DNA of 12,602 nt, taken from the NCBI RefSeq assembly GCF_006345805.1, contig NW_021826508.1, positions 1-12,602 on the forward strand, in the 5' to 3' direction. The position numbers and the translations under genes are program-made. The DNA is from Octopus sinensis. Taxonomy: Eukaryota. Below, piece by piece: positions 1-12,602 of this stretch (position 1 is its first letter; each line of letters starts with the position of its first letter). The notes beneath the pieces are model-generated. The model worked only from the letters and a program-made list of their open reading frames with translations. It was not told the DNA's origin and did no database searches.

Positions 1-100
1 AGGCCCAATTTAAGACCAATAGGGGCCCTAAGCACTGAAAATATTTTGGTGTCCCCATATATATGTAATTCAAGATATAAACACTAAAAACCATAAAAAT

Positions 101-471
101 TGACTGCGGCCATGCTGGAGCACCGCCTTTGGTCGAGCAAACCGACCCCAGGACCTAATCTTTGTAAGCCTAGAACTTATTATATTGGTCCCTTTTGCCA
201 AACTGCTAAGTTACAGGGACGTAAACACACCAACATCGGTTGTCAAGCAATACTAGGAGGACAAACACAGACACACAAACACACACACATATATACACAT
301 ATACATATATACGACAGGTTTCTTATAGTTTCCGTCTACCAAATCCACTCACAAGGCTTTGGTCGGCCTGAGGCTATAGTAGAAAACACTTGCCCATGGT
401 GCCATGCAGTGGGACTGAACCCGAAACCATGTGGTTGGTAAACAAGCTACTTACCACACAGCCACTCCTGC
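101..471 (-). mobile_element. tRNA-derived SINE, family 1, near full length
   Basis: On the minus strand there is an A-box-like TGGCTGTGTGG (454-464) and a B-box-like GGTTCAGTCCC (411-421). These are followed by CCATGGGCAAGTG, a central (TA/TG) microsatellite and a 3' body ending GCTCCAGCATGGCCGCAGTCA. Homologous blocks recur at about 1490, 5254, 6661 and 7031. Confidence 0.85.
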
Positions 472-489
472 ATATATATATATATATAT

Positions 490-1893: not shown

Positions 1894-1895
1894 TA

Positions 1896-2888
1896 TATAT
1901 AAGACAGTAGGGTGTGATTTGAAGGCGATTTGGCTTCTATTTCTGCAAGGTCTAGTTACCTTATAGAGGTGTTCCTCCTTGGCTCTTACACACACACACA
2001 CACACATATATAGTAGGTTGAAGGAGATTTGGCTGCTATTTCTACCAGGTCTAGCGTCCACATAGAGTTCTCCCTCATTGGTTCATATATACATATATAC
2101 ATAGATAAGACAGCTGGGTCTGATTTGATGGAGATTTGGCTGCTATTTCTACCAGATCTAGCTACCATCTACAGGTCTCCCTCATTGGCTCATACGTACA
2201 TAGATAAGACAGTAGGGTCTGATTTGAGGGAGATTTGGCTGCTATTTCTACCAGACCTAGCTATCATCTACAGGTCTCCCTCATTGGTTCATACGTACAT
2301 AGATAAGACAGTAGGGTCTGATTTGAGGGAGATTTGGCTGCTATTTCTACCAGACCTAGCTACCATCTACAGGTCTCCCTCATTGGCTCACACTACATGG
2401 ATAAGACAGTAGAGTCTGGAAGATTTGGCTGCTATTTCTAGCAGGCCTAGCAATCATCTACAGGTCTCCCTCATTGGTTCATATACACATAGATAAGATA
2501 GTAGGGTCTGATTTGAGGGAAATTTGGCTGCTATTTCTACCAGATCTAGCTACCGTGTAGAGGTCTCCCTCATGGGCCCATACATACATAGATAAGACAG
2601 TAAGGTCTGATTTGGGGGAGATTTGGCTGCTATTTCGACCAGATCTAGCAACCGTTTAGAGGTTCCCTCATTAGCTCATACATAAATAGATAAGACAGTA
2701 GGGTCCGATTTGAGAGAGTTTGGCTGCTATTTCTAGCAGGCCTAGCTACCGTGTAGAGGTCTCCCTCATTGGCTTATACATACATAGATAAGAAAGTAGG
2801 GTCTGATTTGAGGGAGATTTGGCTGCTATTTCTACCAGATCTAGCTACCATCTACAGGTCTCCCTCATTGGCTCACATATACATACAT
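1896..2888. repeat. 99-bp minisatellite, about 10 units
   Basis: The core (A/G)TTTGGCT(G/T)CTATTTC occurs at 1928, 2027, 2134, 2233, 2332, 2423, 2522, 2621, 2718 and 2817 (spacings 99, 107, 99, 99, 91, 99, 99, 97, 99). Confidence 0.95.
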
Positions 2889-3138
2889 TAAACAGTAGTC
2901 CATTGAGATATTTTCAAGAGGTCTCCCTCCTCAACGCGCTTAGCATGTGTGTGTCCGTGTGTCCCCATTTGTTCGCTCATGTGTCTGTGTGCGTGTGTGT
3001 GTGTCTGTATGTGTGTGTGTGTCGACGTTAACTTTGCACGTGTACAAATGGTACCGGTTTCGCACCCCTCTAGGGGGTTCGTTTTTTTTTTTTATAAATT
3101 CCCTCGTCAGGGTATCGGGTGTCAGAAGGGGACTGTTT

Positions 3139-3625
3139 GGTGGTGGCGGTGGCGTATCGGGGTATTTATAATTGATGCCCCTTGATTTTGGTGACCGCCG
3201 ATGATGCCGGCGGCGGCGGTGGCGATGGTGGTGGTGGTGGTGGTGGTGGTAGTGGCGATGGTGGTGGTGGTGGTGGTGATGGTGGTGATGCTGCTGCTAG
3301 TAAGAAGGTGGTTGTGGCGGTGGTGATTGCGGTATTTGGTGGGGGGGATGGGTATGATGGCGTCGGGGGTTGAAGGTGATGACCGTGATAATCATGGTGG
3401 TGGTGGTGGTGGTGATGCCCATGACGACGATGATGATGATGACGGTGATGGTGATGTTAACGATGATGACGATGTTGACGATGATGATGATGATGATGAT
3501 GACGATGACGGTGATGACGATGATGATGATGATGATGATGACGATGACGATGATGATGATGATGATGATGATAGTGATGATGATGATGATGATGATGACG
3601 ATGACGATGATGATGATGATGATGA

Positions 3626-3664
<39 letters not shown>

Positions 3665-3787
3665 TGATGATGATGACAACGGTGATTATCGTTGTTGACT
3701 TCTGTGATGATGATGATGATGATGGATGATGGCCTGGTGTTGGTAGCTAGGTAGTGGTGGTAGTGGTGGTGGTGATGGTGATGGTGG
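3139..3787. repeat. Compound trinucleotide microsatellite (GGT/GGC)n-(GAT/GAC)n-(GGT)n
   Basis: Directly visible, with the (GAT/GAC)n block at about 3421-3727. It produces the poly-Gly, poly-Asp, poly-Met and poly-Ser ORFs. Confidence 0.95.
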
Positions 3788-4084: not shown

Positions 4085-4708
4085 TACACATCCCCCTCCA
4101 CACACACGCACATATATACATACATACATGCATACATACATACACACATACATACATACACACATACATACATACATACGTATATACATACATACATACA
4201 TATATACATACATACATACATACATACATACATACATACACACATACATACATACACACATACATACATACATACATACATACCTACATACATACATACA
4301 TACATAAATGCATACATACATACATGCATACATACATACATACACTAATGCATACATACATACATGCATGCATACGTACATACATACATATATAACATAC
4401 ATATACATACATACATACATACACACATACACACATTACATACATACATACATACATACATACCTACATACATACATACATACACACATACATACATACA
4501 TACATACATACATACATACAGACACAATACATACATACATAATACATACATACTTACAACATACATACATACATACATACATACATACACAATACATACA
4601 TACATACATACATACACACATACACATACATACATACATACATACTACATACACACATACATACATACATACATACAACATAACTTACATACATACATAC
4701 ATACATAC

Positions 4709-4739
<31 letters not shown>

Positions 4740-5057
4740 CATACATACATAAAACATACATGCATATATACACACATACATACATACATACATACATACA
4801 TACATACACACATACATACATACATACATACACACATACATACATACATACGTATATACATACATACATACATATATACATACATACATATGTACATACA
4901 TGCATACATACACACATACATACATACATACGTATATACATACATACATACATATATACATACATACATATGTACATACATGCATACATACACACATACA
5001 TACACAGATACATATATACATACATACATACACATACACATACATACATACACACCT
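4085..5057. repeat. Long (TACA)n/(CA)n microsatellite
   Basis: About 970 bp of imperfect ACAT repeats, the source of the HTYI/MYVC ORFs. Confidence 0.97.
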
Positions 5058-5253
5058 ACAGATGTGTTTGCTCTTTGCTCTCATGATAGGTTTCTGGTGT
5101 CCTTCCTGAAAATTTATAGATCCCTATCTATGTGCCTGACTGTCTTTGAACCCCTTTTTCTAGCACTATCTTTCTGATTTGTATGAATGTATGTATGTAT
5201 TAATATAAATAATATATAAATATTAATATATAAATATATGCATATATATTTAT

Positions 5254-5634
5254 CTTGTTTACCAACCACATGGTTCCGGGTTCAGACCCAATGCGTGGCA
5301 CCTTGGGCAAGTGTCTTCTACTCTAGCCTCAGGCCGACCAAAGCCTTGTGAGTGGATTTGGTAGACGGAAACTGAAAGAAGCCTGTCGTATATATGTATA
5401 TATATATGTAGTGGTGTAGTTTGTGTGTCTGTGTTTGTCCCCTAGCATTGCTTGACAACCGATGCTGGTGTGTTTAGTCCCCGTAACTTAGCGGTTCGTC
5501 AAAAGAGAGCGATAGAATAAGTACTAGGCTTACAAAGAATAAGTCCCGGGGTCGATTTGCTCAACTAAAGGCGGTGCTCCAGCATGGCCGCAGTCAAATG
5601 ACTGAAACAAGTAAAAGAGTAAAAGAGTAAAGAG
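5254..5634 (+). mobile_element. SINE family 1, lacking the extreme 5' end (A box), with a (TAAAAGAG)n tail
   Basis: CCAACCACATGGTTCCGGGTTCAGACCC (B box), CCTTGGGCAAGTGTCTT and GGTAGACGGAAACTGAAAGAAGCC, ending GCTCCAGCATGGCCGCAGTCAAATGACTGAAACAAGTAAAAGAG. It is the reverse complement of the other family 1 copies. Confidence 0.88.
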
Positions 5635-5672
5635 TATATATATATATATATATATATATAAATATATATATA
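5635..5672. repeat. (TA)n microsatellite
   Basis: TA run directly after the SINE tail. Confidence 0.9.
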
Positions 5673-5902: not shown

Positions 5903-6258
5903 ATGTGTGTGTGTGTTTGGTGTGTGTGTGTGTGTGTGGTGTGTGTGTGTGTGTTTGTGTGTGGGTGGTGTGGTATGTGTGTGTTTGTGTGTTGTGTGTG
6001 GTATTGTGTGTGTGTATGTGTGTGTATGTATGTATGGGTGTATGTATGTATGTGTGTGTTTGTGTGTATGTTGTGTGTTGTGTGTGTGTGTGTGTTGTGT
6101 GTGTGTGTGTGTGTTTGTGGTGTGTGTGTGGTTGTGTTGTGCATGTGTGTTGTGTTTGTGTGTGTGTATGTGTGTGTGTATGTATGTATGTGTGTATGTA
6201 TGTATGTATGTATGTATGTATGTATGTATGTGTGTGTGTTTGTGTATGTGGTGGTTTG

Positions 6259-6293
<35 letters not shown>

Positions 6294-6446
6294 GTTTGTG
6301 TGTGTGGTATGTGTGTTTGTGCATGTGTGTGTGTGTTTGTGTGTATGTATGTGTGTGTGTATGTCTGTGTGTGTGTATGTATGTATGTATGTATGTATGT
6401 ATGTATGTGTGGTTGTGTGTGTGTGTGTGTGTGTGTGTTGTGTGTG

Positions 6447-6487
<41 letters not shown>

Positions 6488-6526
6488 TTGTATGTGTGTA
6501 TGTGTGTGTATGTGTGTGTGTGTGTA
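5903..6526. repeat. Long (TG)n/(TATG)n microsatellite
   Basis: About 620 bp of imperfect TG and TATG repeats. Confidence 0.97.
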
Positions 6527-6535
6527 TCTATAATG

Positions 6536-6645
6536 GAGAGAGAAAGAGAGAGAGAGAAAGAGAGAGAGAGACAGAGAAAAAGAGAGAGAGACAGAAAGAG
6601 AGAAAGAGAGAGAGACAGAAAGAGAGAGAGAGAAAGAGAGAGAGA
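6536..6645. repeat. (GA)n-type polypurine microsatellite
   Basis: Imperfect GAGA/GAAA/GACA run. Confidence 0.93.
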
Positions 6646-6660
6646 ATGAGTGTATGTATT

Positions 6661-7013
6661 TCTCTTTCTCTTTTTTCTCTTTTTACTTGTTTCAGTCATT
6701 TGACTGTGGCCATGCTGGAGCACCGCCTTTAATTGAGCAACTCAACCCCGGGACTTATTCTTTATAAGCCCAATACTTATTCTATCAGTCTCTTTTGCTG
6801 AACTGCTAGGTTACGGGGACGTAAACACACCAGCATCGGTTGTCAAGCGATGTTGGGGGGGGGGACAACACAGACACACAAACACACACACACATATATA
6901 TATACATATATACGACGGGCTTCTTTCAGTTTCCGTCTACCAAATCCACTCACAAGGCTTTGGTCGGCCTGAGGCTATAGTAGGAGACACTTGCCCAAGA
7001 TGCCATGCAGTGG
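6661..7013 (-). mobile_element. SINE family 1, lacking most of the tRNA head, with tail
   Basis: Runs from the TCTC/TTTT tail and TTACTTGTTTCAGTCATTTGACTGTGGCCATGCTGGAGC to CCCAAGATGCCATGCAGTGG, stopping just before the B box. Confidence 0.88.
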
Positions 7014-7030
7014 CACCTCCTACTCACGGG

Positions 7031-7347
7031 TAGTACTTATTCTATCGGTCTCTTTTGCCGAACCGCTAAGTGACGGGGACGTAAACACACCAGCATCAGT
7101 TGTCAAGCAATGCTAGAGGGACAAACACAGACACACAAACACACACATACATACATATTTATATATATATATATACAGATATACGACAGGCTTCTTTCAG
7201 TTTCCGTCTACCAAATCCACTCACAAGGCATTGGTCGGCCCGAAGCTATAGCAGAAGACACTTGCCCAAGATGCCACGCAGTGGGACTGAACCCAGAACC
7301 ATGTGGTTGGTTAGCAAGCTACTTACCACACAGCCACTCCTGCGCCT
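7031..7347 (-). mobile_element. SINE family 1 with intact tRNA head, lacking the 3' part
   Basis: The minus strand starts AGGCGCAGGAGTGGCTGTGTGGTAAG (A box) and has GGTTCAGTCCC (B box). Homology ends at GAATAAGTACTA (7031). Confidence 0.88.
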
Positions 7348-7391
7348 AATTAATTACATAATTAATTACAAAAAATGTAAATAAATAAAGA

Positions 7392-8157
7392 TTTCATTTG
7401 ACATAGTAATCTGAATGCTGAGGTTTCAAACCAACCATAATTGGTCCAAATATTGTTTTATGTTTGACCCGGTCAGATCCAGCCTCTCACACCTACCTGA
7501 CAATGTCATTCCAATCATAAAGAATCACATCATTGAAATCTCAAAACTATGAGATAATCCATGATTAATCCAAAACAATGTGGATAAATAAGTATTCCAT
7601 TTGACAGAATAATCTGCGTGCTAAAGGACTAAACTGGCCATATCTGACCTCTCACACCTACTCTGCAATGTCATTCTAAAAATAAAGAATCACATCATTG
7701 AAATCTCAAAGCTATGAGATAATCCATGATTAATCCAAACCAATGTGGATAAATAAGGATTCCATTTGACAATAATCTGAATGCTAAAGGATTAAACTGG
7801 CCATATCTGACCTCTCACACCTACTCTGCAATGTCATTCTAAAAATAAAGAATCACATCATTGAAATCTCAAAGCTACGAGATAATCCATGATTAATCCA
7901 AAACAATGTGGATAAATAAGGATTCCATTTGACAATAATCTGCGTGCTAAGGGGTTTAACTAGCCAAATCCAGCGCAAATATTCTTGTTTTATGTTCAAA
8001 CCAGCCAGATAAGTATTACATTTGAGAAAGCCATATTAGGCCCAAATATTCTGTTTTATATTCAAACCAGTCAGATCCAGCCTCTCACACCTTCCCTACA
8101 ATATCATTCCAGTCATAAACAATCACATCATTGAAATCTCAAAGGTATGAGATAATC
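7392..8157. repeat. AT-rich tandem repeat family, about 163-270 bp units (host repeat)
   Basis: CTCTCACACC anchors at 7484, 7649, 7812 and 8082. Each is followed by CAAT(G/A)TCATTC...AATCACATCATTGAAATCTCAAA..TA(T/C)GAGATAATC. Confidence 0.9.
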
Positions 8158-8938
8158 ACCATCATTATCATCGTTTAACGTCCGTTCTCTGTGCTAGCAT
8201 GGGTTGGATGGTTCGACCGGGGTCTGGGAAGCCAGAAGGCTGCACCAGGCTCCAGTCTCATCTGGCAATGTTTCTACAGCTGGATGCCCTTCCTAACGCC
8301 AACCACTCCGTGAGTGTAGTGGGTGCTTTTTATGTGCCACCGGCACAGGGGCCAGAAGAGGCTGGCAAACAGCCATGATCGGCTGGTGCTTTTTACATGT
8401 CACCAACGCGGATGTCAGTCAGGTGGCGCTGGCATCAGCCACGTTCGGATGGTACTTTTTATGTGCCACCGGCACGGAAGCCAGTCTAGGGTGTCACGCT
8501 GGGTTTTGGTAGTGTTTAGGTGACTCTCCTGCATCTAATCACTGTCCTGTTCACCTGCTGTTGTCAAAGAGTATCCATTTCTCATCACAAGTAATGATTC
8601 AATGCAAGGCGGCAAGCTGGCAGAAATGTTAGCACGCCGGGCGAAATGCTGAGCGGTATTTCGTCAGCGGCTACGTTCTGAGTTCAAATTCTGCCGAGGT
8701 CGACTTTGCCTTTCATCCTTTCGGGGTCGATAAATTAAGTACCAGTTACGCACTGGTGTCGATGTAATCGACTTAATACCTATGTCTGTCCTTGTTTGTC
8801 CCCCTCTGTGTTTAGCCCCTTGTGGGTAATAAAGAAATAGGTACTTTTTATGTGTCACCGGCACGGGTATCTTAACTACAATTTCCATTTGATTTTTATT
8901 TTGATGTTGGTGTTAACATACTTGACTCAATAGGTCTT
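8158..8938 (-). mobile_element. (GAT)n-tailed retroposon (SINE-like or LINE-derived), minus strand, with internal 63-66 bp repeats, interrupted
   Basis: The minus strand ends CCCATGCTAGCACAGAGAACGGACGTTAAACGATGATAATGATG and contains GTTAGGAAGGGCATCCAGCTGTAGAAA. The motif GGT(G/A)CTTTTTA occurs at 8322, 8385, 8451 and 8840. Host repeat sequence lies on both sides. Confidence 0.6.
8608..8840 (+). mobile_element. tRNA-derived SINE, family 3, apparently full length
   Basis: 5' GGCGGCAAGCTGGCAGAA (A-box-like), GTTCAAATTC (8682-8691, B box), core GACTTTGCCTTTCATCCTTTCGGGGTCGATAAATTAAGTACCAG and an A-rich end AATAAAGAAATA. No clear target-site duplication. Confidence 0.8.
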
Positions 8939-8939
8939 G

Positions 8940-9094
8940 TTTAATTTAAATCATTGGGAAAAAATAAGGATCACATTTGACGGAACAATCTGAATGCTAA
9001 AGGTTTAATCTGGTCATGTCTGTTCCAAATATTCTGTTTAATTTTTGTTCAAAGAAGCCAGATCAGGCTTCTCACACCTAGCCTACAATATCTT
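8940..9094. repeat. Host tandem repeat, continuation up to the LINE insertion site
   Basis: AAATAAGGATCACATTTGAC...AATCTGAATGCTAAAGGTTTAA...CCAAATATTCTG...TTCTCACACCTAGCCTACAATATC matches the 7392-8157 units. Confidence 0.8.
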
Positions 9095-9557
9095 GCATAA
9101 GATCTGGTCATCAAATCTAAGTAGAGACTTCAAACTTGAAATCTTCAAAGCCACAGTTGAACCAATTCTACTATATGGCTCAGAAACCTGGACGTTATCA
9201 AAGAAGCTTCAGAGGCAGTTGGATGGAACCTACACTCGCCTCCTTATGAGAGCTCAAAATCTCTTGTGGAAGCGCCATCCAACCAAAATGCAAATATATG
9301 GGAAACTACCACCTGTGTCATCTCTTGTGAAAGGTAGAAGAGTCCAGTTTGCTGGACATTGTTGTAGAGCTGAAAAAGAAGTAATTTCTACTCTTCTCCT
9401 CTGGAAGCCATCTACTCGCAATCCCAGAGGGCGCACACTCTCCTACCCTGATGTAATCTCCAGGGATACAGGCATCCAGCAACAGGACCTCTGTAATGCT
9501 ATGATGGACCCTGAAGTCTGGCGTAGCATGGTAAATTCCATTGTCTCGACCACGGTC
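9092..9557 (+). pseudogene. C-terminal fragment of LINE ORF2 (post-RT region, RTE-like)
   Basis: LHKIWSSNLSRDFKLEIFKATVEPILLYGSETWTL...LDGTYTRLLMRAQNL.WK.HPT...RRVQFAGHC.R. The LYGSETW and R..FAGH motifs are typical of RTE-clade ORF2 downstream of the RT domain. The frame is open, but the N-terminal 16 aa of the tracked ORF come from host repeat and the RT core is absent. Confidence 0.85.
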
Positions 9558-12504
9558 AAGATACCAGAGGGTGCACACTCTCCTACCCTGATCTAATCTC
9601 CAGGGATACAGGCATCCAGCAACAGAACCTCCGTAATGCTATGATGGACCGTGAAGTCTGGCGTAGCATAGTAAATTCCATTGTCTTGACCATGGTCGCG
9701 ATACCAGAGGGTGCACACTCTCCTACCCTGATGTAATCTCCAGGGATACAGGCATTCAGCAACAGGACCTCCGTAATGCTATGATGGACCATGAAGTCTG
9801 GCGTAGCATGGTAAATTCCATTGTCTCGACCATGGTCGCGATACCAGAGGGTGCACGCTCTCCTACCCTGATCCAGGGATACAGGCATCCAGCAACAGGA
9901 CCTCCGTAATGCTATGATGGACCGTGAAGTCTGGCGTAGAATGGTAAATTCCATTGTCTTGACCACCGTCGCGATACCAGAGGGTGCACACTCTCCTACC
10001 CTGATCTAATCTCCAGGGATACAGGCATCCAGCAACAGGACCTCTGTAATGCTATGATGGACCCTGAAGTCTGGCGTAGCATGGTAAATTCCATTGTCTC
10101 GACCACGGTCGCGATACCAGAGGGCGCACATTCTCCTACCCTGATCTAATCTCCAGGGATACAGGCATCCAGCAACAGGACCTCCGTAATGCTATGATGG
10201 ACCCTGAAGTCTGGCGTAGCATGGTAAATTCCATTGTCTCGACCACGGTCATGATACCAGAGGGCGCACACTCTCCTACCCTGATGTAATCTCCAGGGAT
10301 ACAGGCATCCAGCAACAGGACCTCTGTAATGCTATGATGGACCCTGAAGTCTGGCGTAGCATGGTAAATTCCATTGTCTCGACCACGGTCGCGATACCAG
10401 AGGGTGCATACTCTCCTACCCTGATCTAATCTCCAGGGATACAGGCATCCAGCAACAGGACCTCCGTAATGCTATGATGGACCATGAAGTCTGGCGTAGC
10501 ATGGTAAATTCCATCGTCTAGACTACGGTCGCGATACCAGAGGGTGCACACTCTCCTACCCTGATGTAATCTCCAGGGATACAGGCATCCAGCAACAGGA
10601 GCTCCATAATACTATGATGGACCATGAAGTCTGGCGTAGCATGGTAAATTCCATTGTCTCGACCACGGTCGCGATACCAGAGGGTGCACACTCTCCTACC
10701 CTGATCTAATCTCCAGGGATACAGGCATCCAGCAACAGGACCTCCGTAATGCCATGATGGACCGTGAAGTCTGGCGTAGCATGGTAAATTCCATTGTCTC
10801 GACCACGGTCACGATACCAGAGGGCGCACACTCTCCTACCCTGATGTAATCTCCAGGGATACATGCATCTAGCTACAGGACCTCCGTAATGCCATGATGG
10901 ACCCTGAAGTCTGGTGTAGCATGGTAAATTCCATTGTCTCGACCACGGTCGCGATATCAGAGGGCGCACACTCTCCTACCCTGATGTAATCTCCAGGGAT
11001 ACAGGCATCCAGCAACAGGACCTCCATAATGCTATGATGGACCGTGAAGTCTGGCGTAGCATGGTAAATTCCATTGTCTCGACCACGGTCGCGATACCAG
11101 AAGGTGCACACTCTCCTACCCTGATGTAATCTCCAGGGATACAGGCATCCAGCAACAGGACCTCCATAATGCTATGATGGACCCTGAAGTCTGGCGTAGC
11201 ATGGTAAATTCCATTGTCCCGACCACGGTCGCGATGCCAGAGGGCGCACACTCTCCTACCCTGATGTAATCTCCAGGTATACAGGCATCCAGCAACAGGA
11301 CCTCCGTAATGCTATGATGGACCGTGAAGTCTGGCGTAGCATGGTAAATTCCATTGTCTCGACCACGGTCGCGATACCAGAGGGTGCACACTCTCCTACC
11401 CTGATCTAATCTCCAGGGATACAGGCATCCAGCAACAGGACCTCTATAATGCTATGATGGACCGTGAAGTCTGGCGTAGCATGGTAAATTCCATTGTCTC
11501 GACCACGGTCGCGATACCAGAGGGTGCACACTCTCCTACCCTGATGTAATCTCCAGGGATACAGGCATCCAGCAACAGGACCTCTGTAATGCTATGATGG
11601 ACCGTGAAGTCTGGCGTAGCATGGTAAATTCCATTGTCTCGACCACGGTAGCGATACCAGAGAGTGCACACTCTCCTACCCTGATGTAATCTCCAGGGAT
11701 ACAGGCATCCAGCAACAGGACCTCCATAATACTATGATGGACCATGAAGTCTGGCGTAGCATGGTAAATTCCATTGTCTTGACCACGGTCGCGATACCAG
11801 AGGGTGCACACTCTCCTACCCTGATCTAATCTCCAGGGATACAGGCATCCAGCAACAGGACCTCCGTAATGCCATGATGGACCGTGAAGTCTGGCGTAGC
11901 ATGGTAAATTCCATTGTCTCGACCACGGTCACGATACCAGAGGGTGCACACTCTCCTACCCTGATGTAATCTCCAGGGATACAGGCATCCAGCAACAGGA
12001 CCTCCATAATGCCATGATGGACCGTGAAGTCTGGCGTAGCATGGTAAATTCCATTGTCTCGACCACGGTCGCGATACCAGAGGGCGCACACTCTCCTACC
12101 CTGATCTGATCTCCAGGGATACAGGCATCCAGCAACAGGACCTCCGTAATGCCATGATGGACCGTGAAGTCTTGCGTAGCATGGTAAATTCCATTGTCTC
12201 GACCACGCTCGCGATACCAGAGGGTGCACACTCTCCTACCCTGATGTAATCTCCAGGGATACAGGCATCCAGCAACAGGACCTCCGTAATGCTATGATGG
12301 ACTGTGAAGTCTGGCGTAGCATGGTAAATTCCATTGTCTCGACCACGCTCGCGATACCAGAGGGTGCACACTCTCCTACCCTGATCTAATCTCCAGGGAT
12401 ACAGGCATCCAGCAACAGGACCTCCGTAATGCCATGATGGACCGTGAAGTCTTGCGTAGCATGGTAAATTCCATTGTCTCGACCACGGTCGAACGATGAT
12501 GATG
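9095..12504 (+). mobile_element. 5'-truncated RTE-like non-LTR retrotransposon (LINE) insertion with an amplified 3' end, flanked by a 10-bp TSD
   Basis: Identical ACAATATCTT at 9085-9094 and 12505-12514, with the host repeat continuous across it. RTE-type protein similarity at the 5' part, and a 3' end GAA CGA TGA TGA TGA (stop plus GAT tail) at 12491-12505. Confidence 0.88.
9416..12488 (+). repeat. 140-bp tandem array (22 units) derived from the LINE ORF2 3' end
   Basis: Unit starts at 9416, 9556, 9696, 9836, 9969, then every 140 bp to 12349. Unit 4 is 133 bp because of a 7-bp deletion. The total, 3073 bp, equals 21x140+133. Confidence 0.97.
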
Positions 12505-12602
12505 ACAATATCTTTCTAAAAATAAACAATCACATCCTTGAAATCTCAAAGCTACGAGATGATGCGAGATTAATTCAAAACATCGTGAATAAATAAGTTT
12601 TA
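12505..12602. repeat. Host tandem repeat resuming after the LINE
   Basis: ACAATATCTTTCTAAAAATAAACAATCACATCCTTGAAATCTCAAAGCTACGAGAT...ATTAATTCAAAACA matches the unit sequence following CTCTCACACCTAC at 7649 and 7812. Confidence 0.88.

What the first reader, a model, noticed from the sequence alone, without database searches (positions are those of the whole stretch)
9085..12514. Satellite born inside one LINE insertion: last 140 bp of an RTE-like ORF2 amplified 22-fold between intact TSDs
Seen in sequence: a single 5'-truncated LINE bounded by a perfect ACAATATCTT duplication. About 320 bp is unique ORF2 and 3073 bp is head-to-tail copies of the terminal 140 bp. Only the last copy has the stop and (GAT)n tail, so this is not a stack of independent insertions. 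The 140-bp period is not a multiple of 3, so the array cannot extend the protein. Established: TE fragments can seed satellites. Inference: this locus preserves a whole satellite-birth event with both ends. It may be unique to this site, or it may be a mobile LINE-plus-array unit.
Basis: partly seen in the sequence, partly recalled or inferred. Interest (0 to 1): 0.8.

Follow-up and report, generated by a model that had tools for sequence, protein, structure and literature searches.

The report
Tandem array grown inside one LINE copy
A short, dead copy of an octopus-type jumping gene (an RTE-like LINE) has had its last 140 bases copied head to tail 22 times between its intact insertion scars; it is an unusually clean example of a process that is already well documented.

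Summary
A 5'-truncated LINE 3' end (9095-12504, + strand) lies between two perfect copies of ACAATATCTT. It has 324 bp of unique ORF2, then 22 head-to-tail units (3073 bp; 21 of 140 bp, one of 133 bp), then one stop and a (GAT)n tail. Four uninterrupted copies of the 163-bp host repeat in the same window carry the target sequence once, so the duplication is a real target-site duplication. All 21 junctions are the same junction. It joins ...GGTCG to CGATACC... at a TCG microhomology inside the element's conserved 3' hairpin, with no tail between units. This rules out stacked insertions. Derived non-CpG variants are shared by subsets of units, two unit types tend to alternate, and u10 and u18 are identical. 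The array therefore grew stepwise at the DNA level, not in one burst. None of 209 related ORF2 fragments reads across the junction, and related copies carry one unit. The family is an APE-type LINE common in Octopus; RTE-like is plausible but was not placed phylogenetically. I could not search the source genome, so a mobile LINE-plus-array subfamily is not excluded. TE-derived tandem arrays, including LINE ORF2/3'-end satellites, are well documented, so interest is modest.

The parts
9085..9094 (.). Left target-site duplication, ACAATATCTT
   Evidence: Exact 10-mer found only here and at 12505-12514. Host-repeat paralogs carry it once.
9095..9418 (+). Unique part of the 5'-truncated LINE: ORF2 C-terminal region, 324 bp, open frame
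   Evidence: The translation is 89% identical to P0001 and aligns over its full length with 18 relatives. It is 93-94% nt identical to an Octopus vulgaris copy, L001.
9419..9558 (+). Unit 1: the native last 140 bp of ORF2, encoding ...PRGRTLSYPDVISRDTGIQQQDLCNAMMDPEVWRSMVNSIVSTTV. Its left edge CAATCCC is private to this unit.
   Evidence: L001 reads CGCGATACC at this place, like the junctions.
9419..12491 (+). Array of 22 head-to-tail units, 3073 bp, with 21 identical-type junctions ...ACGGTCG|CGATACCAGAGGG
9594..9596 (+). TAA that ends the ORF2 read-through 12 codons into unit 2 (frame shifted by +2 per unit)
   Evidence: ORF 9045-9596.
9839..9971 (+). Unit 4, 133 bp, with a 7-bp deletion (TAATCTC)
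12470..12504 (+). Terminal hairpin region CATTGTC-TCGAC-CACG-GTCGA-ACGATG. The array breakpoint (after GGTCG, 12491) lies in its 3' arm.
   Evidence: MFE fold. TCGAC-N4-GTCGA is present in all six family 3' ends compared.
12492..12504 (+). Single native 3' end: AACGATGATGATG, with stop TGA at 12497-12499 and a (GAT)n tail
   Evidence: Tails in relatives: AACAATGATGATGA....
12505..12514 (.). Right target-site duplication, ACAATATCTT
7443..8159 (+). Paralogous uninterrupted copies of the 163-bp host repeat (7443-7933 x3; 8052-8159), serving as empty-site models
   Evidence: The joined flanks with one TSD copy align colinearly, without a gap, at CTACAATATCTT|TCTAAAAATAAAC.

Best explanation
A roughly 477-bp 5'-truncated copy of an APE-type, RTE-like LINE inserted by target-primed reverse transcription into a copy of a 163-bp host repeat and made a 10-bp TSD. 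This copy comprised 324 bp of ORF2, the last 140 bp, and the stop in a short (GAT)n tail. Later, at the DNA level, the 140-bp segment bounded by two TCG triplets was duplicated once by slippage or microhomology-mediated repair. The triplets sit in ...ACTCG|CGATACC... within ORF2 and ...GGTCG|AACGATG... at the 3' end, an imperfect TCG(NN)CGAT direct repeat. That event created the single junction type. The dimer then expanded and was partly homogenised by repeated unequal exchange or replication slippage of one-, two- and multi-unit blocks, reaching 22 units, while CpG sites decayed. The array has no coding role and is most likely a neutral local minisatellite or nascent satellite. Shown here: the anatomy, the TSD, the junction, and stepwise growth. 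Inferred: the order insertion-then-amplification at this locus, and the molecular mechanism of each duplication.
For: The TSD is real, as four host-repeat paralogs have the target once. There is one junction type with 3-bp microhomology and no tail or TSD between units. The O. vulgaris copy L001 has CGCGATACC at the ORF2 site, so the junction is a plain fusion and unit 1's CAATCCC is a later change. Star-like, one-step origin is rejected. The derived non-CpG transversion GATGTAATC>GATCTAATC is in 10 units (9 as CTAATC, one as CTGATC) and tends to alternate with the ancestral type (permutation p 0.036). The derived CGT>CCT change is shared by units 1, 5, 6, 7, 11 and 13. Units 10 and 18 are identical and units 9 and 17 differ at 3 sites, against a mean of 6.6. 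Even offsets are more alike than odd ones. Divergence at CpG sites is ten times that at other sites (15% vs 1.5% per unit), as expected for DNA ageing in a methylating germline. Family copies normally have a single unit: L001, L002, L003 and L005 each give one BLAST match to the unit. None of 209 related ORF2 fragments carries the junction read-through peptide. The antisense array ORF, which covers all three minus frames, finds only a non-array O. vulgaris copy among 5.8 billion proteins. The window holds other local tandem arrays (99 bp x8, 163 bp x3, 66 bp x2.6), so tandem duplication is common here. A 477-bp original insert is a typical size for 5'-truncated copies. Local unit duplication after initiation is the documented route for TE-derived tandem repeats (PMC3389668).
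Against: The source genome could not be searched, so the same junction at other loci is not excluded. The protein-collection evidence covers only assemblies where ORFs were called ab initio, possibly from other species. Stepwise growth could equally have happened in a master copy before retrotransposition. No orthologous or allelic empty or single-unit state was seen. Copy number rests on one assembly.
Confidence: 0.66

Rival explanations
1. The array was already present in the source element, and a LINE-plus-array RNA was retrotransposed as one unit. An array-bearing full-length element would keep ORF2 almost intact: only the last two residues, ER, are replaced by a 12-residue extension. It would also keep a native hairpin and tail on its last unit, so it could remain mobile and scatter array seeds.
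For: The array lies wholly inside the TSDs and ends with one native tail. The ORF2 read-through loses only 2 residues. Only the terminal unit has the full hairpin with the tail arm. Stepwise growth does not say where the growth took place.
Against: None of 209 related ORF2 C-terminal fragments reads through the junction. The array ORF search found no other array. Four related copies carry one unit. It would require reverse transcription through 3.1 kb of array followed by truncation only 324 bp later, whereas a 477-bp truncated insert is the ordinary outcome.
Confidence: 0.15
2. The reverse transcriptase made the array, or its first few units, during the insertion itself. After copying 140 nt, the nascent cDNA end (complement of TCG) re-annealed to the TCG near the RNA 3' end and copied the same stretch again and again.
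For: All jumps would reuse the same microhomology and so give identical junctions. The breakpoint lies in the 3' hairpin that such enzymes are thought to bind. Tail repeats of such LINEs are commonly attributed to RT slippage (general knowledge).
Against: Shared derived non-CpG variants in 6-10 units, the alternating unit types, and the identical u10/u18 pair amid 4.7% mean divergence cannot arise from a one-step array with independent later mutation. Most copies therefore come from later DNA-level events. There is no positive evidence for the RT step, and no other family copy shows even a dimer.
Confidence: 0.06
3. The array is real but its length is an assembly artefact, with units expanded or collapsed in a tandem repeat.
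For: Tandem arrays of near-identical 140-bp units are hard to assemble. Units 10 and 18 are identical.
Against: Units carry many distinguishing variants (43 variable columns). The blocks 9-11 and 17-19 are not an exact repeat (3, 0 and 7 differences), so there is no simple assembly loop. Both ends are anchored in unique context.
Confidence: 0.08
4. The structure is a stack of independent insertions of a 140-nt SINE-like or truncated LINE RNA into the tail of the previous copy.
For: LINE-into-LINE-tail nesting does occur in this family: in L003 a second LINE starts directly after the (ATG)n tail.
Against: No junction contains a tail, stop or TSD. All 21 junctions have the same breakpoint, with TCG microhomology inside the hairpin.
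Confidence: 0.01

Closest known systems
TE-derived minisatellites and satellites formed by local duplication inside a TE copy (Ahmed & Liang 2012, PMC3389668; reviews PMC9659126, PMC12628747)
   Same: The unit is an internal TE segment. The array sits within a TE copy. Initiation lies between short direct repeats (Haber-Louis type) and is followed by local unit duplication. Such arrays arise preferentially from young TEs.
   Different: Most human cases have only two units. This one has 22 units (3 kb), with both TSDs, the unduplicated upstream ORF2 and the single native tail all preserved. The flanking direct repeat is only 3 bp perfect, or 7 of 9 with a 2-nt bulge.
Chicken HinfI (sCR1) satellite, derived from the CR1 3' UTR plus partial ORF2. 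Also PROsat and Pvc20 (L1 ORF2) and the common cetacean satellite (L1 3' end), as listed in PMC9659126
   Same: The monomer comes from the 3' end or ORF2 of a LINE.
   Different: Those are abundant genome-wide satellites whose birth locus is lost. Here only one small array is known, with its progenitor context intact, and its abundance elsewhere is untested.
Double-insertion model of satellite origin (McGurk & Barbash 2018, PMC5932611)
   Same: A TE provides the seed of a tandem array that then expands by unequal exchange.
   Different: That model makes junctions of TE 3' end (tail) to TE 5' end from two insertions. Here the junction is internal to one copy, has no tail, and uses TCG microhomology.
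Octopus RTE LINEs such as RTE-2_OV (Petrosino et al. 2022, PMC9115989; O. vulgaris repeat annotation PMC13282606)
   Same: It is an APE/RT LINE whose ORF ends in a microsatellite that makes up the 3' UTR. It is abundant in Octopus, and the closest named relative lies on O. vulgaris chromosome OX597819.1.
   Different: Identity with RTE-2_OV could not be tested, as no sequence is available. No tandem array is described for those elements.

Membership tests
Non-LTR retrotransposon (LINE) insertion by TPRT | Target-site duplication flanking a 5'-truncated copy that ends in the family's 3' tail | tested here: met
   The 10-bp TSD is unique in the window. Paralogous empty sites carry the target once. 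The tail AACGATGATGATG matches the tails of relatives.
Non-LTR retrotransposon (LINE) insertion by TPRT | ORF2 homology (RT plus C-terminal region) | tested here: met
   246 homologues at E<=1e-3, the best at 89% identity. Longer relatives carry RVT_1. The window fragment itself lies C-terminal to the RT domain; its only Pfam hit is DUF6451, below threshold.
RTE clade | Single large ORF with APE endonuclease and RT, and no sizeable ORF1 | tested here: inconclusive
   No full-length relative was recovered; the longest is 463 aa. The APE hits came from read-throughs into neighbouring elements (P0181 and the L003 ORF).
RTE clade | Very short 3' UTR made of a microsatellite, with the ORF ending in or next to it | tested here: met
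   The stop TGA lies inside the GATGATGATGA tail, and the same holds in L001-L005. This matches the description of octopus RTE-2_OV (PMC9115989).
RTE clade | Phylogenetic placement of the RT with RTE references | not tested
   No named reference set was on hand. The resemblance of the C-terminal GR..W.D...DR..WR region to BovB and Rex3 is recalled from memory only.
Satellite DNA proper | Long arrays and/or high genomic abundance at several loci | not testable with these tools
   No collection held the source genome. The junction and unit patterns gave 0 hits in metagenome, viral and prokaryote contigs, which is uninformative. Only one 3.07-kb array is known.
TE-derived tandem repeat (in-situ type) | Monomer homologous to an internal TE segment, arrayed head to tail inside that TE copy | tested here: met
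Mobile LINE carrying an internal array | The same junction at other loci with different TSDs | tested here: inconclusive
   0 of 209 related proteins have the read-through. No other array ORF was found. Four related copies carry a single unit. The source genome itself was not searchable.
Double-insertion tandem TE | Junction made of the 3' tail (with or without a TSD) followed by the TE 5' part | tested here: not met
   The junctions read GGTCG|CGATACC, with no tail.

The most novel reading that the evidence does not exclude
The LINE-plus-array is, or descends from, a retrotransposition-competent RTE subfamily. A full-length version would lose only the last two ORF2 residues and would keep a native hairpin and tail on its final unit. 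LINE retrotransposition would then disperse ready-made 140-bp satellite seeds, and this locus or its master would be the traceable origin of an octopus satellite.
Probability: 0.12. Interest if true: 0.6.

Novelty: new member of a known kind. Interest (0 to 1): 0.3.

Why it matters
This is a clean, fully bounded example of how a tandem array starts from a retrotransposon. The progenitor segment, the single founding junction with its microhomology, the native tail and both TSDs all survive, and the variants record stepwise growth. It could serve as a teaching case or a calibration case for models of satellite birth, and as a marker locus for copy-number variation in octopus populations. It does not reveal a new kind of element or mechanism unless the array proves to be mobile or to have seeded a genome-wide satellite.

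Tried and rejected
- **Public collections:** the junction pattern and a within-unit pattern gave 0 hits in metagenome, viral and prokaryote contigs. These collections evidently hold no close octopus DNA, so the result is uninformative.
- **Exact look-ups:** window-encoded ORFs (137 aa antisense, 183 aa sense) are not on record, so the source contig and species could not be retrieved.
- **Full-length relative for clade assignment:** only fragments up to 463 aa were found, and the loci L004 and L005 are truncated or decayed.
- **RNA scans:** Rfam and tRNA scans of the window found nothing.
- **Whole-unit RNA fold:** it is not more stable than shuffles (z -0.77). Only the terminal hairpin is notable, and it is invariant, so covariation cannot be assessed.
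- **Tail-inclusive junction model** (GGTCGAACGAT + ACCAGAGGG): rejected. It needs indels, whereas the plain TCG fusion needs none and matches L001's CGCGATACC.
- **P0135's 'IPEG' match:** it lies in the RT domain and is not a junction.
- **Identical pair u10/u18:** alone it is not significant, since about 0.3 such pairs are expected among 231 under a Poisson model. The case for stepwise growth rests on the shared non-CpG variants.
Full report
**Observation**

The sequence is as described. TRF reports one array at 9416-12491: period 140, 22.0 copies, 94% matches, no indels. Anchoring on CTCCTACCCTGAT gives 22 units spaced 140 bp apart. The one exception is a 133-bp spacing caused by a 7-bp deletion in unit 4.

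In the register CGATACC...GGTCG the array is 9419-12491, or 3073 bp. It is preceded by 324 bp of unique sequence (9095-9418) and followed by AACGATGATGATG (12492-12504).

- ACAATATCTT occurs only at 9085-9094 and 12505-12514. Shuffles gave a mean of 0.07 matches, and none of 200 had two.
- The ORF2 frame is open from 9095 through unit 1.
- Because 140 = 3x46+2, the frame continues only 12 codons into unit 2 and stops at TAA 9594-9596.
- In the last unit the native end reads ...STTVER, with the stop TGA at 12497-12499 inside the GAT repeat.

**What the element is**

The 156-residue translation has 246 homologues at E<=1e-3. The best is 89% identical, and all 18 aligned relatives end at the same C-terminus...STxVEQ/ER. 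Longer relatives carry RVT_1.

The only named relative is an antisense 'hypothetical protein' of Octopus vulgaris on chromosome OX597819.1. The LINE copy there (L001, minus strand, 10058-10405) is 93-94% identical in DNA to the window's copy. It has one unit and the tail AACAATGATGATGA.

The window also carries repeats that I recognise from memory as octopus-type SINEs, together with extreme microsatellites. The host is therefore very probably an octopod, though the exact source was not retrievable.

'RTE-like' fits in two ways: the ORF ends inside a microsatellite with no other 3' UTR, and this is exactly what is described for octopus RTE-2_OV (PMC9115989). I could not recover a full-length relative or place the RT in a phylogeny, so clade membership stays plausible rather than shown.

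**The insertion is real and single**

The flanks belong to a 163-bp host repeat that occurs uninterrupted four more times in the window (7443-7933 and 8052-8159). I joined the two flanks with one copy of ACAATATCTT. The result aligns colinearly and without a gap with all four paralogues: CTACAATATCTT|TCTAAAAATAAAC against, for example, CTACAATATCAT|TCCAGTCATAAAC. This is an in-window empty-site control, and it shows that the 10-mer is a target-site duplication.

**The junction**

All 21 junctions are variants of ...CGACCACGGTCG|CGATACCAGAGGG....

- The native 3' end is ...CGACCACGGTCG|AACGATGATG.
- The native ORF2 site in the O. vulgaris copy reads ...CTACTCG|CGATACCAAAGGG.
- The junction is therefore a plain fusion at a shared TCG, flanked by an imperfect direct repeat TCG(NN)CGAT.
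- Unit 1's own CAATCCC at that site is a later change: a CpG transition plus one transversion at the array's left edge, which unequal exchange cannot homogenise.
- No junction holds a tail, stop or TSD. A stack of independent insertions and the double-insertion route (PMC5932611) are therefore excluded.

The breakpoint lies in the 3' arm of a terminal hairpin, CATTGT-C-TCGAC-CACG-GTCGA-ACGATG. Its core TCGAC-N4-GTCGA is present in all six family 3' ends compared. It may be the RT recognition element and may have favoured slippage; that is inference.

**How the array grew**

Units differ pairwise by 6.6 sites on average, or 4.7%. Twelve of the 43 variable columns are shared by two or more units.

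- Relatives and the protein sequence show that GAT-GTA-ATC (D-V-I) is ancestral. The transversion to GATCTAATC is not at a CpG, is present in 10 units (9 as CTAATC, one as CTGATC), is absent from unit 1, and tends to alternate with the ancestral type (14 of 19 adjacent pairs differ; permutation p 0.036).
- The derived CGT>CCT change (R>P) is shared by units 1, 5, 6, 7, 11 and 13.
- GCT>GCC is shared by units 10, 11, 18, 19, 20 and 22.
- Units 10 and 18 are identical, units 9 and 17 differ at 3 sites, and units 20 and 22 share a further variant.
- Even offsets are more alike than odd ones (offset 2, p 0.024).

With non-CpG divergence of 1.5% per site, such sharing cannot come from recurrent mutation. 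A one-step array followed by independent decay is rejected. The array grew by successive duplications of single units, dimers and larger blocks, as expected from unequal exchange or slippage.

CpG positions have diverged ten times more than the rest (15% vs 1.5%). This indicates time spent in a methylating germline, so the array is not brand new.

**Unique locus or mobile unit**

This is the one question the tools could not settle, because none holds the source genome. Indirect evidence favours a local event.

- Four related copies (L001, L002, L003, L005) each give a single match to the 140-bp unit. L004's 3' end looks like a normal single end by motif, although it fell below the BLAST threshold.
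- None of 209 related ORF2 fragments contains the junction read-through peptide. The one 'IPEG' match lies in the RT domain.
- A 137-residue antisense ORF covering all three minus frames of the unit finds nothing but the non-array O. vulgaris copy among 5.8 billion proteins.
- The junction and unit patterns gave no hits in metagenome, viral or prokaryote contigs, but those collections are not informative here.

Against this, an array-bearing full-length element would lose only the last two ORF2 residues and would keep a native hairpin and tail on its last unit. A mobile LINE-plus-array is therefore mechanistically conceivable, and I give it about 0.12-0.15.

A reverse-transcriptase re-priming origin for the first units cannot be excluded. 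It has no positive support and cannot explain most of the copies.

**Comparison with what is known**

TE-derived tandem repeats are common. At least 23% of human minisatellites and satellites derive from TEs; they arise preferentially in young elements and grow by local unit duplication. Some are flanked by short direct repeats, as in the Haber-Louis model (PMC3389668).

Satellites derived from LINE 3' ends or ORF2 are catalogued in PMC9659126 (see also PMC12628747):

- chicken HinfI/sCR1, from the CR1 3' UTR plus partial ORF2;
- PROsat and Pvc20, from L1 ORF2;
- the common cetacean satellite, from the L1 3' end.

This locus is a new member of that kind. It is notable for how completely the birth context is preserved and for being in a cephalopod, where I found no such description. 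The same window holds other local tandem arrays (99 bp x8.3, 163 bp x3, 66 bp x2.6), so the process looks routine in this genome.

**Verdict**

- Observation: confirmed.
- Structural interpretation: supported.
- 'Satellite birth preserved whole': reasonable but not proven to be in situ, and not a surprise to specialists.
- Interest: 0.3.
- Most novel surviving reading: a mobile array-bearing RTE that seeds satellites, with probability about 0.12.

Noticed in passing
window 8160-8500 (minus strand), also 8840-8870: A SINE-like element ends ...GGACGTTAAACGATGATAATGATG, the same tail type as the LINE. It is inserted in another copy of the 163-bp host repeat (8052-8159). Its head carries 66-bp repeats containing GGTGCTTTTTATGTGCCACCGGCAC. 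It may be a non-autonomous partner of the same LINE family.
   Followed up: partly
L001 10300-10500 (minus strand; O. vulgaris OX597819.1): The LINE 3' fragment there has a 71-bp internal deletion. It is directly preceded by CATAAAAAGCAC-type repeats like those in the head of the window's SINE-like element, which suggests a chimeric head-plus-LINE-3'-end non-autonomous element.
   Followed up: no
L003 540-2908: A second, slightly 5'-truncated APE+RT LINE (Exo_endo_phos, RVT_1) begins immediately after the (ATG)n tail of the family copy, and an ORF reads through from the tail. This is LINE-into-LINE-tail nesting and may reflect a preference for the tail microsatellite as a target.
   Followed up: partly
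window 12470-12504, and the 3' ends of L001-L005: The family 3' end carries a TCGAC-N4-GTCGA hairpin present in all six 3' ends compared, with loops CACG, CAAG or TGCG. In most copies an outer stem CATTGT/ACAATG reaches into the tail. It is a likely RT recognition element. The whole-unit fold is not significant (z -0.77).
   Followed up: partly
window 1895-2898; 898-1087 vs 1988-2177: There is a 99-bp tandem array (8.3 copies, 86% matches) with a 289-bp higher-order period. A 190-bp segment is duplicated 1090 bp apart at 94% identity.
   Followed up: no
window 3421-3731, 4110-5060, 5904-6525, 6536-6645: Very long microsatellites: (ATG)103, (ACAT)240, (TG)320 and (GA)55. About a fifth of the window is simple sequence.
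   Followed up: no
window 100-488, 1473-1762, 6672-7360, 5251-5644 (inverted): Several copies of a SINE-like repeat, each with an internal (CA)n or (TA)n tract. Two of them lie head to tail 260-271 bp apart at 6700-7360. No tRNA or Rfam match was found.
   Followed up: partly
window 9419-12491: CpG sites in the array have diverged ten times more than other sites (15% vs 1.5% per unit). This implies germline CpG methylation of this repeat in the host.
   Followed up: yes
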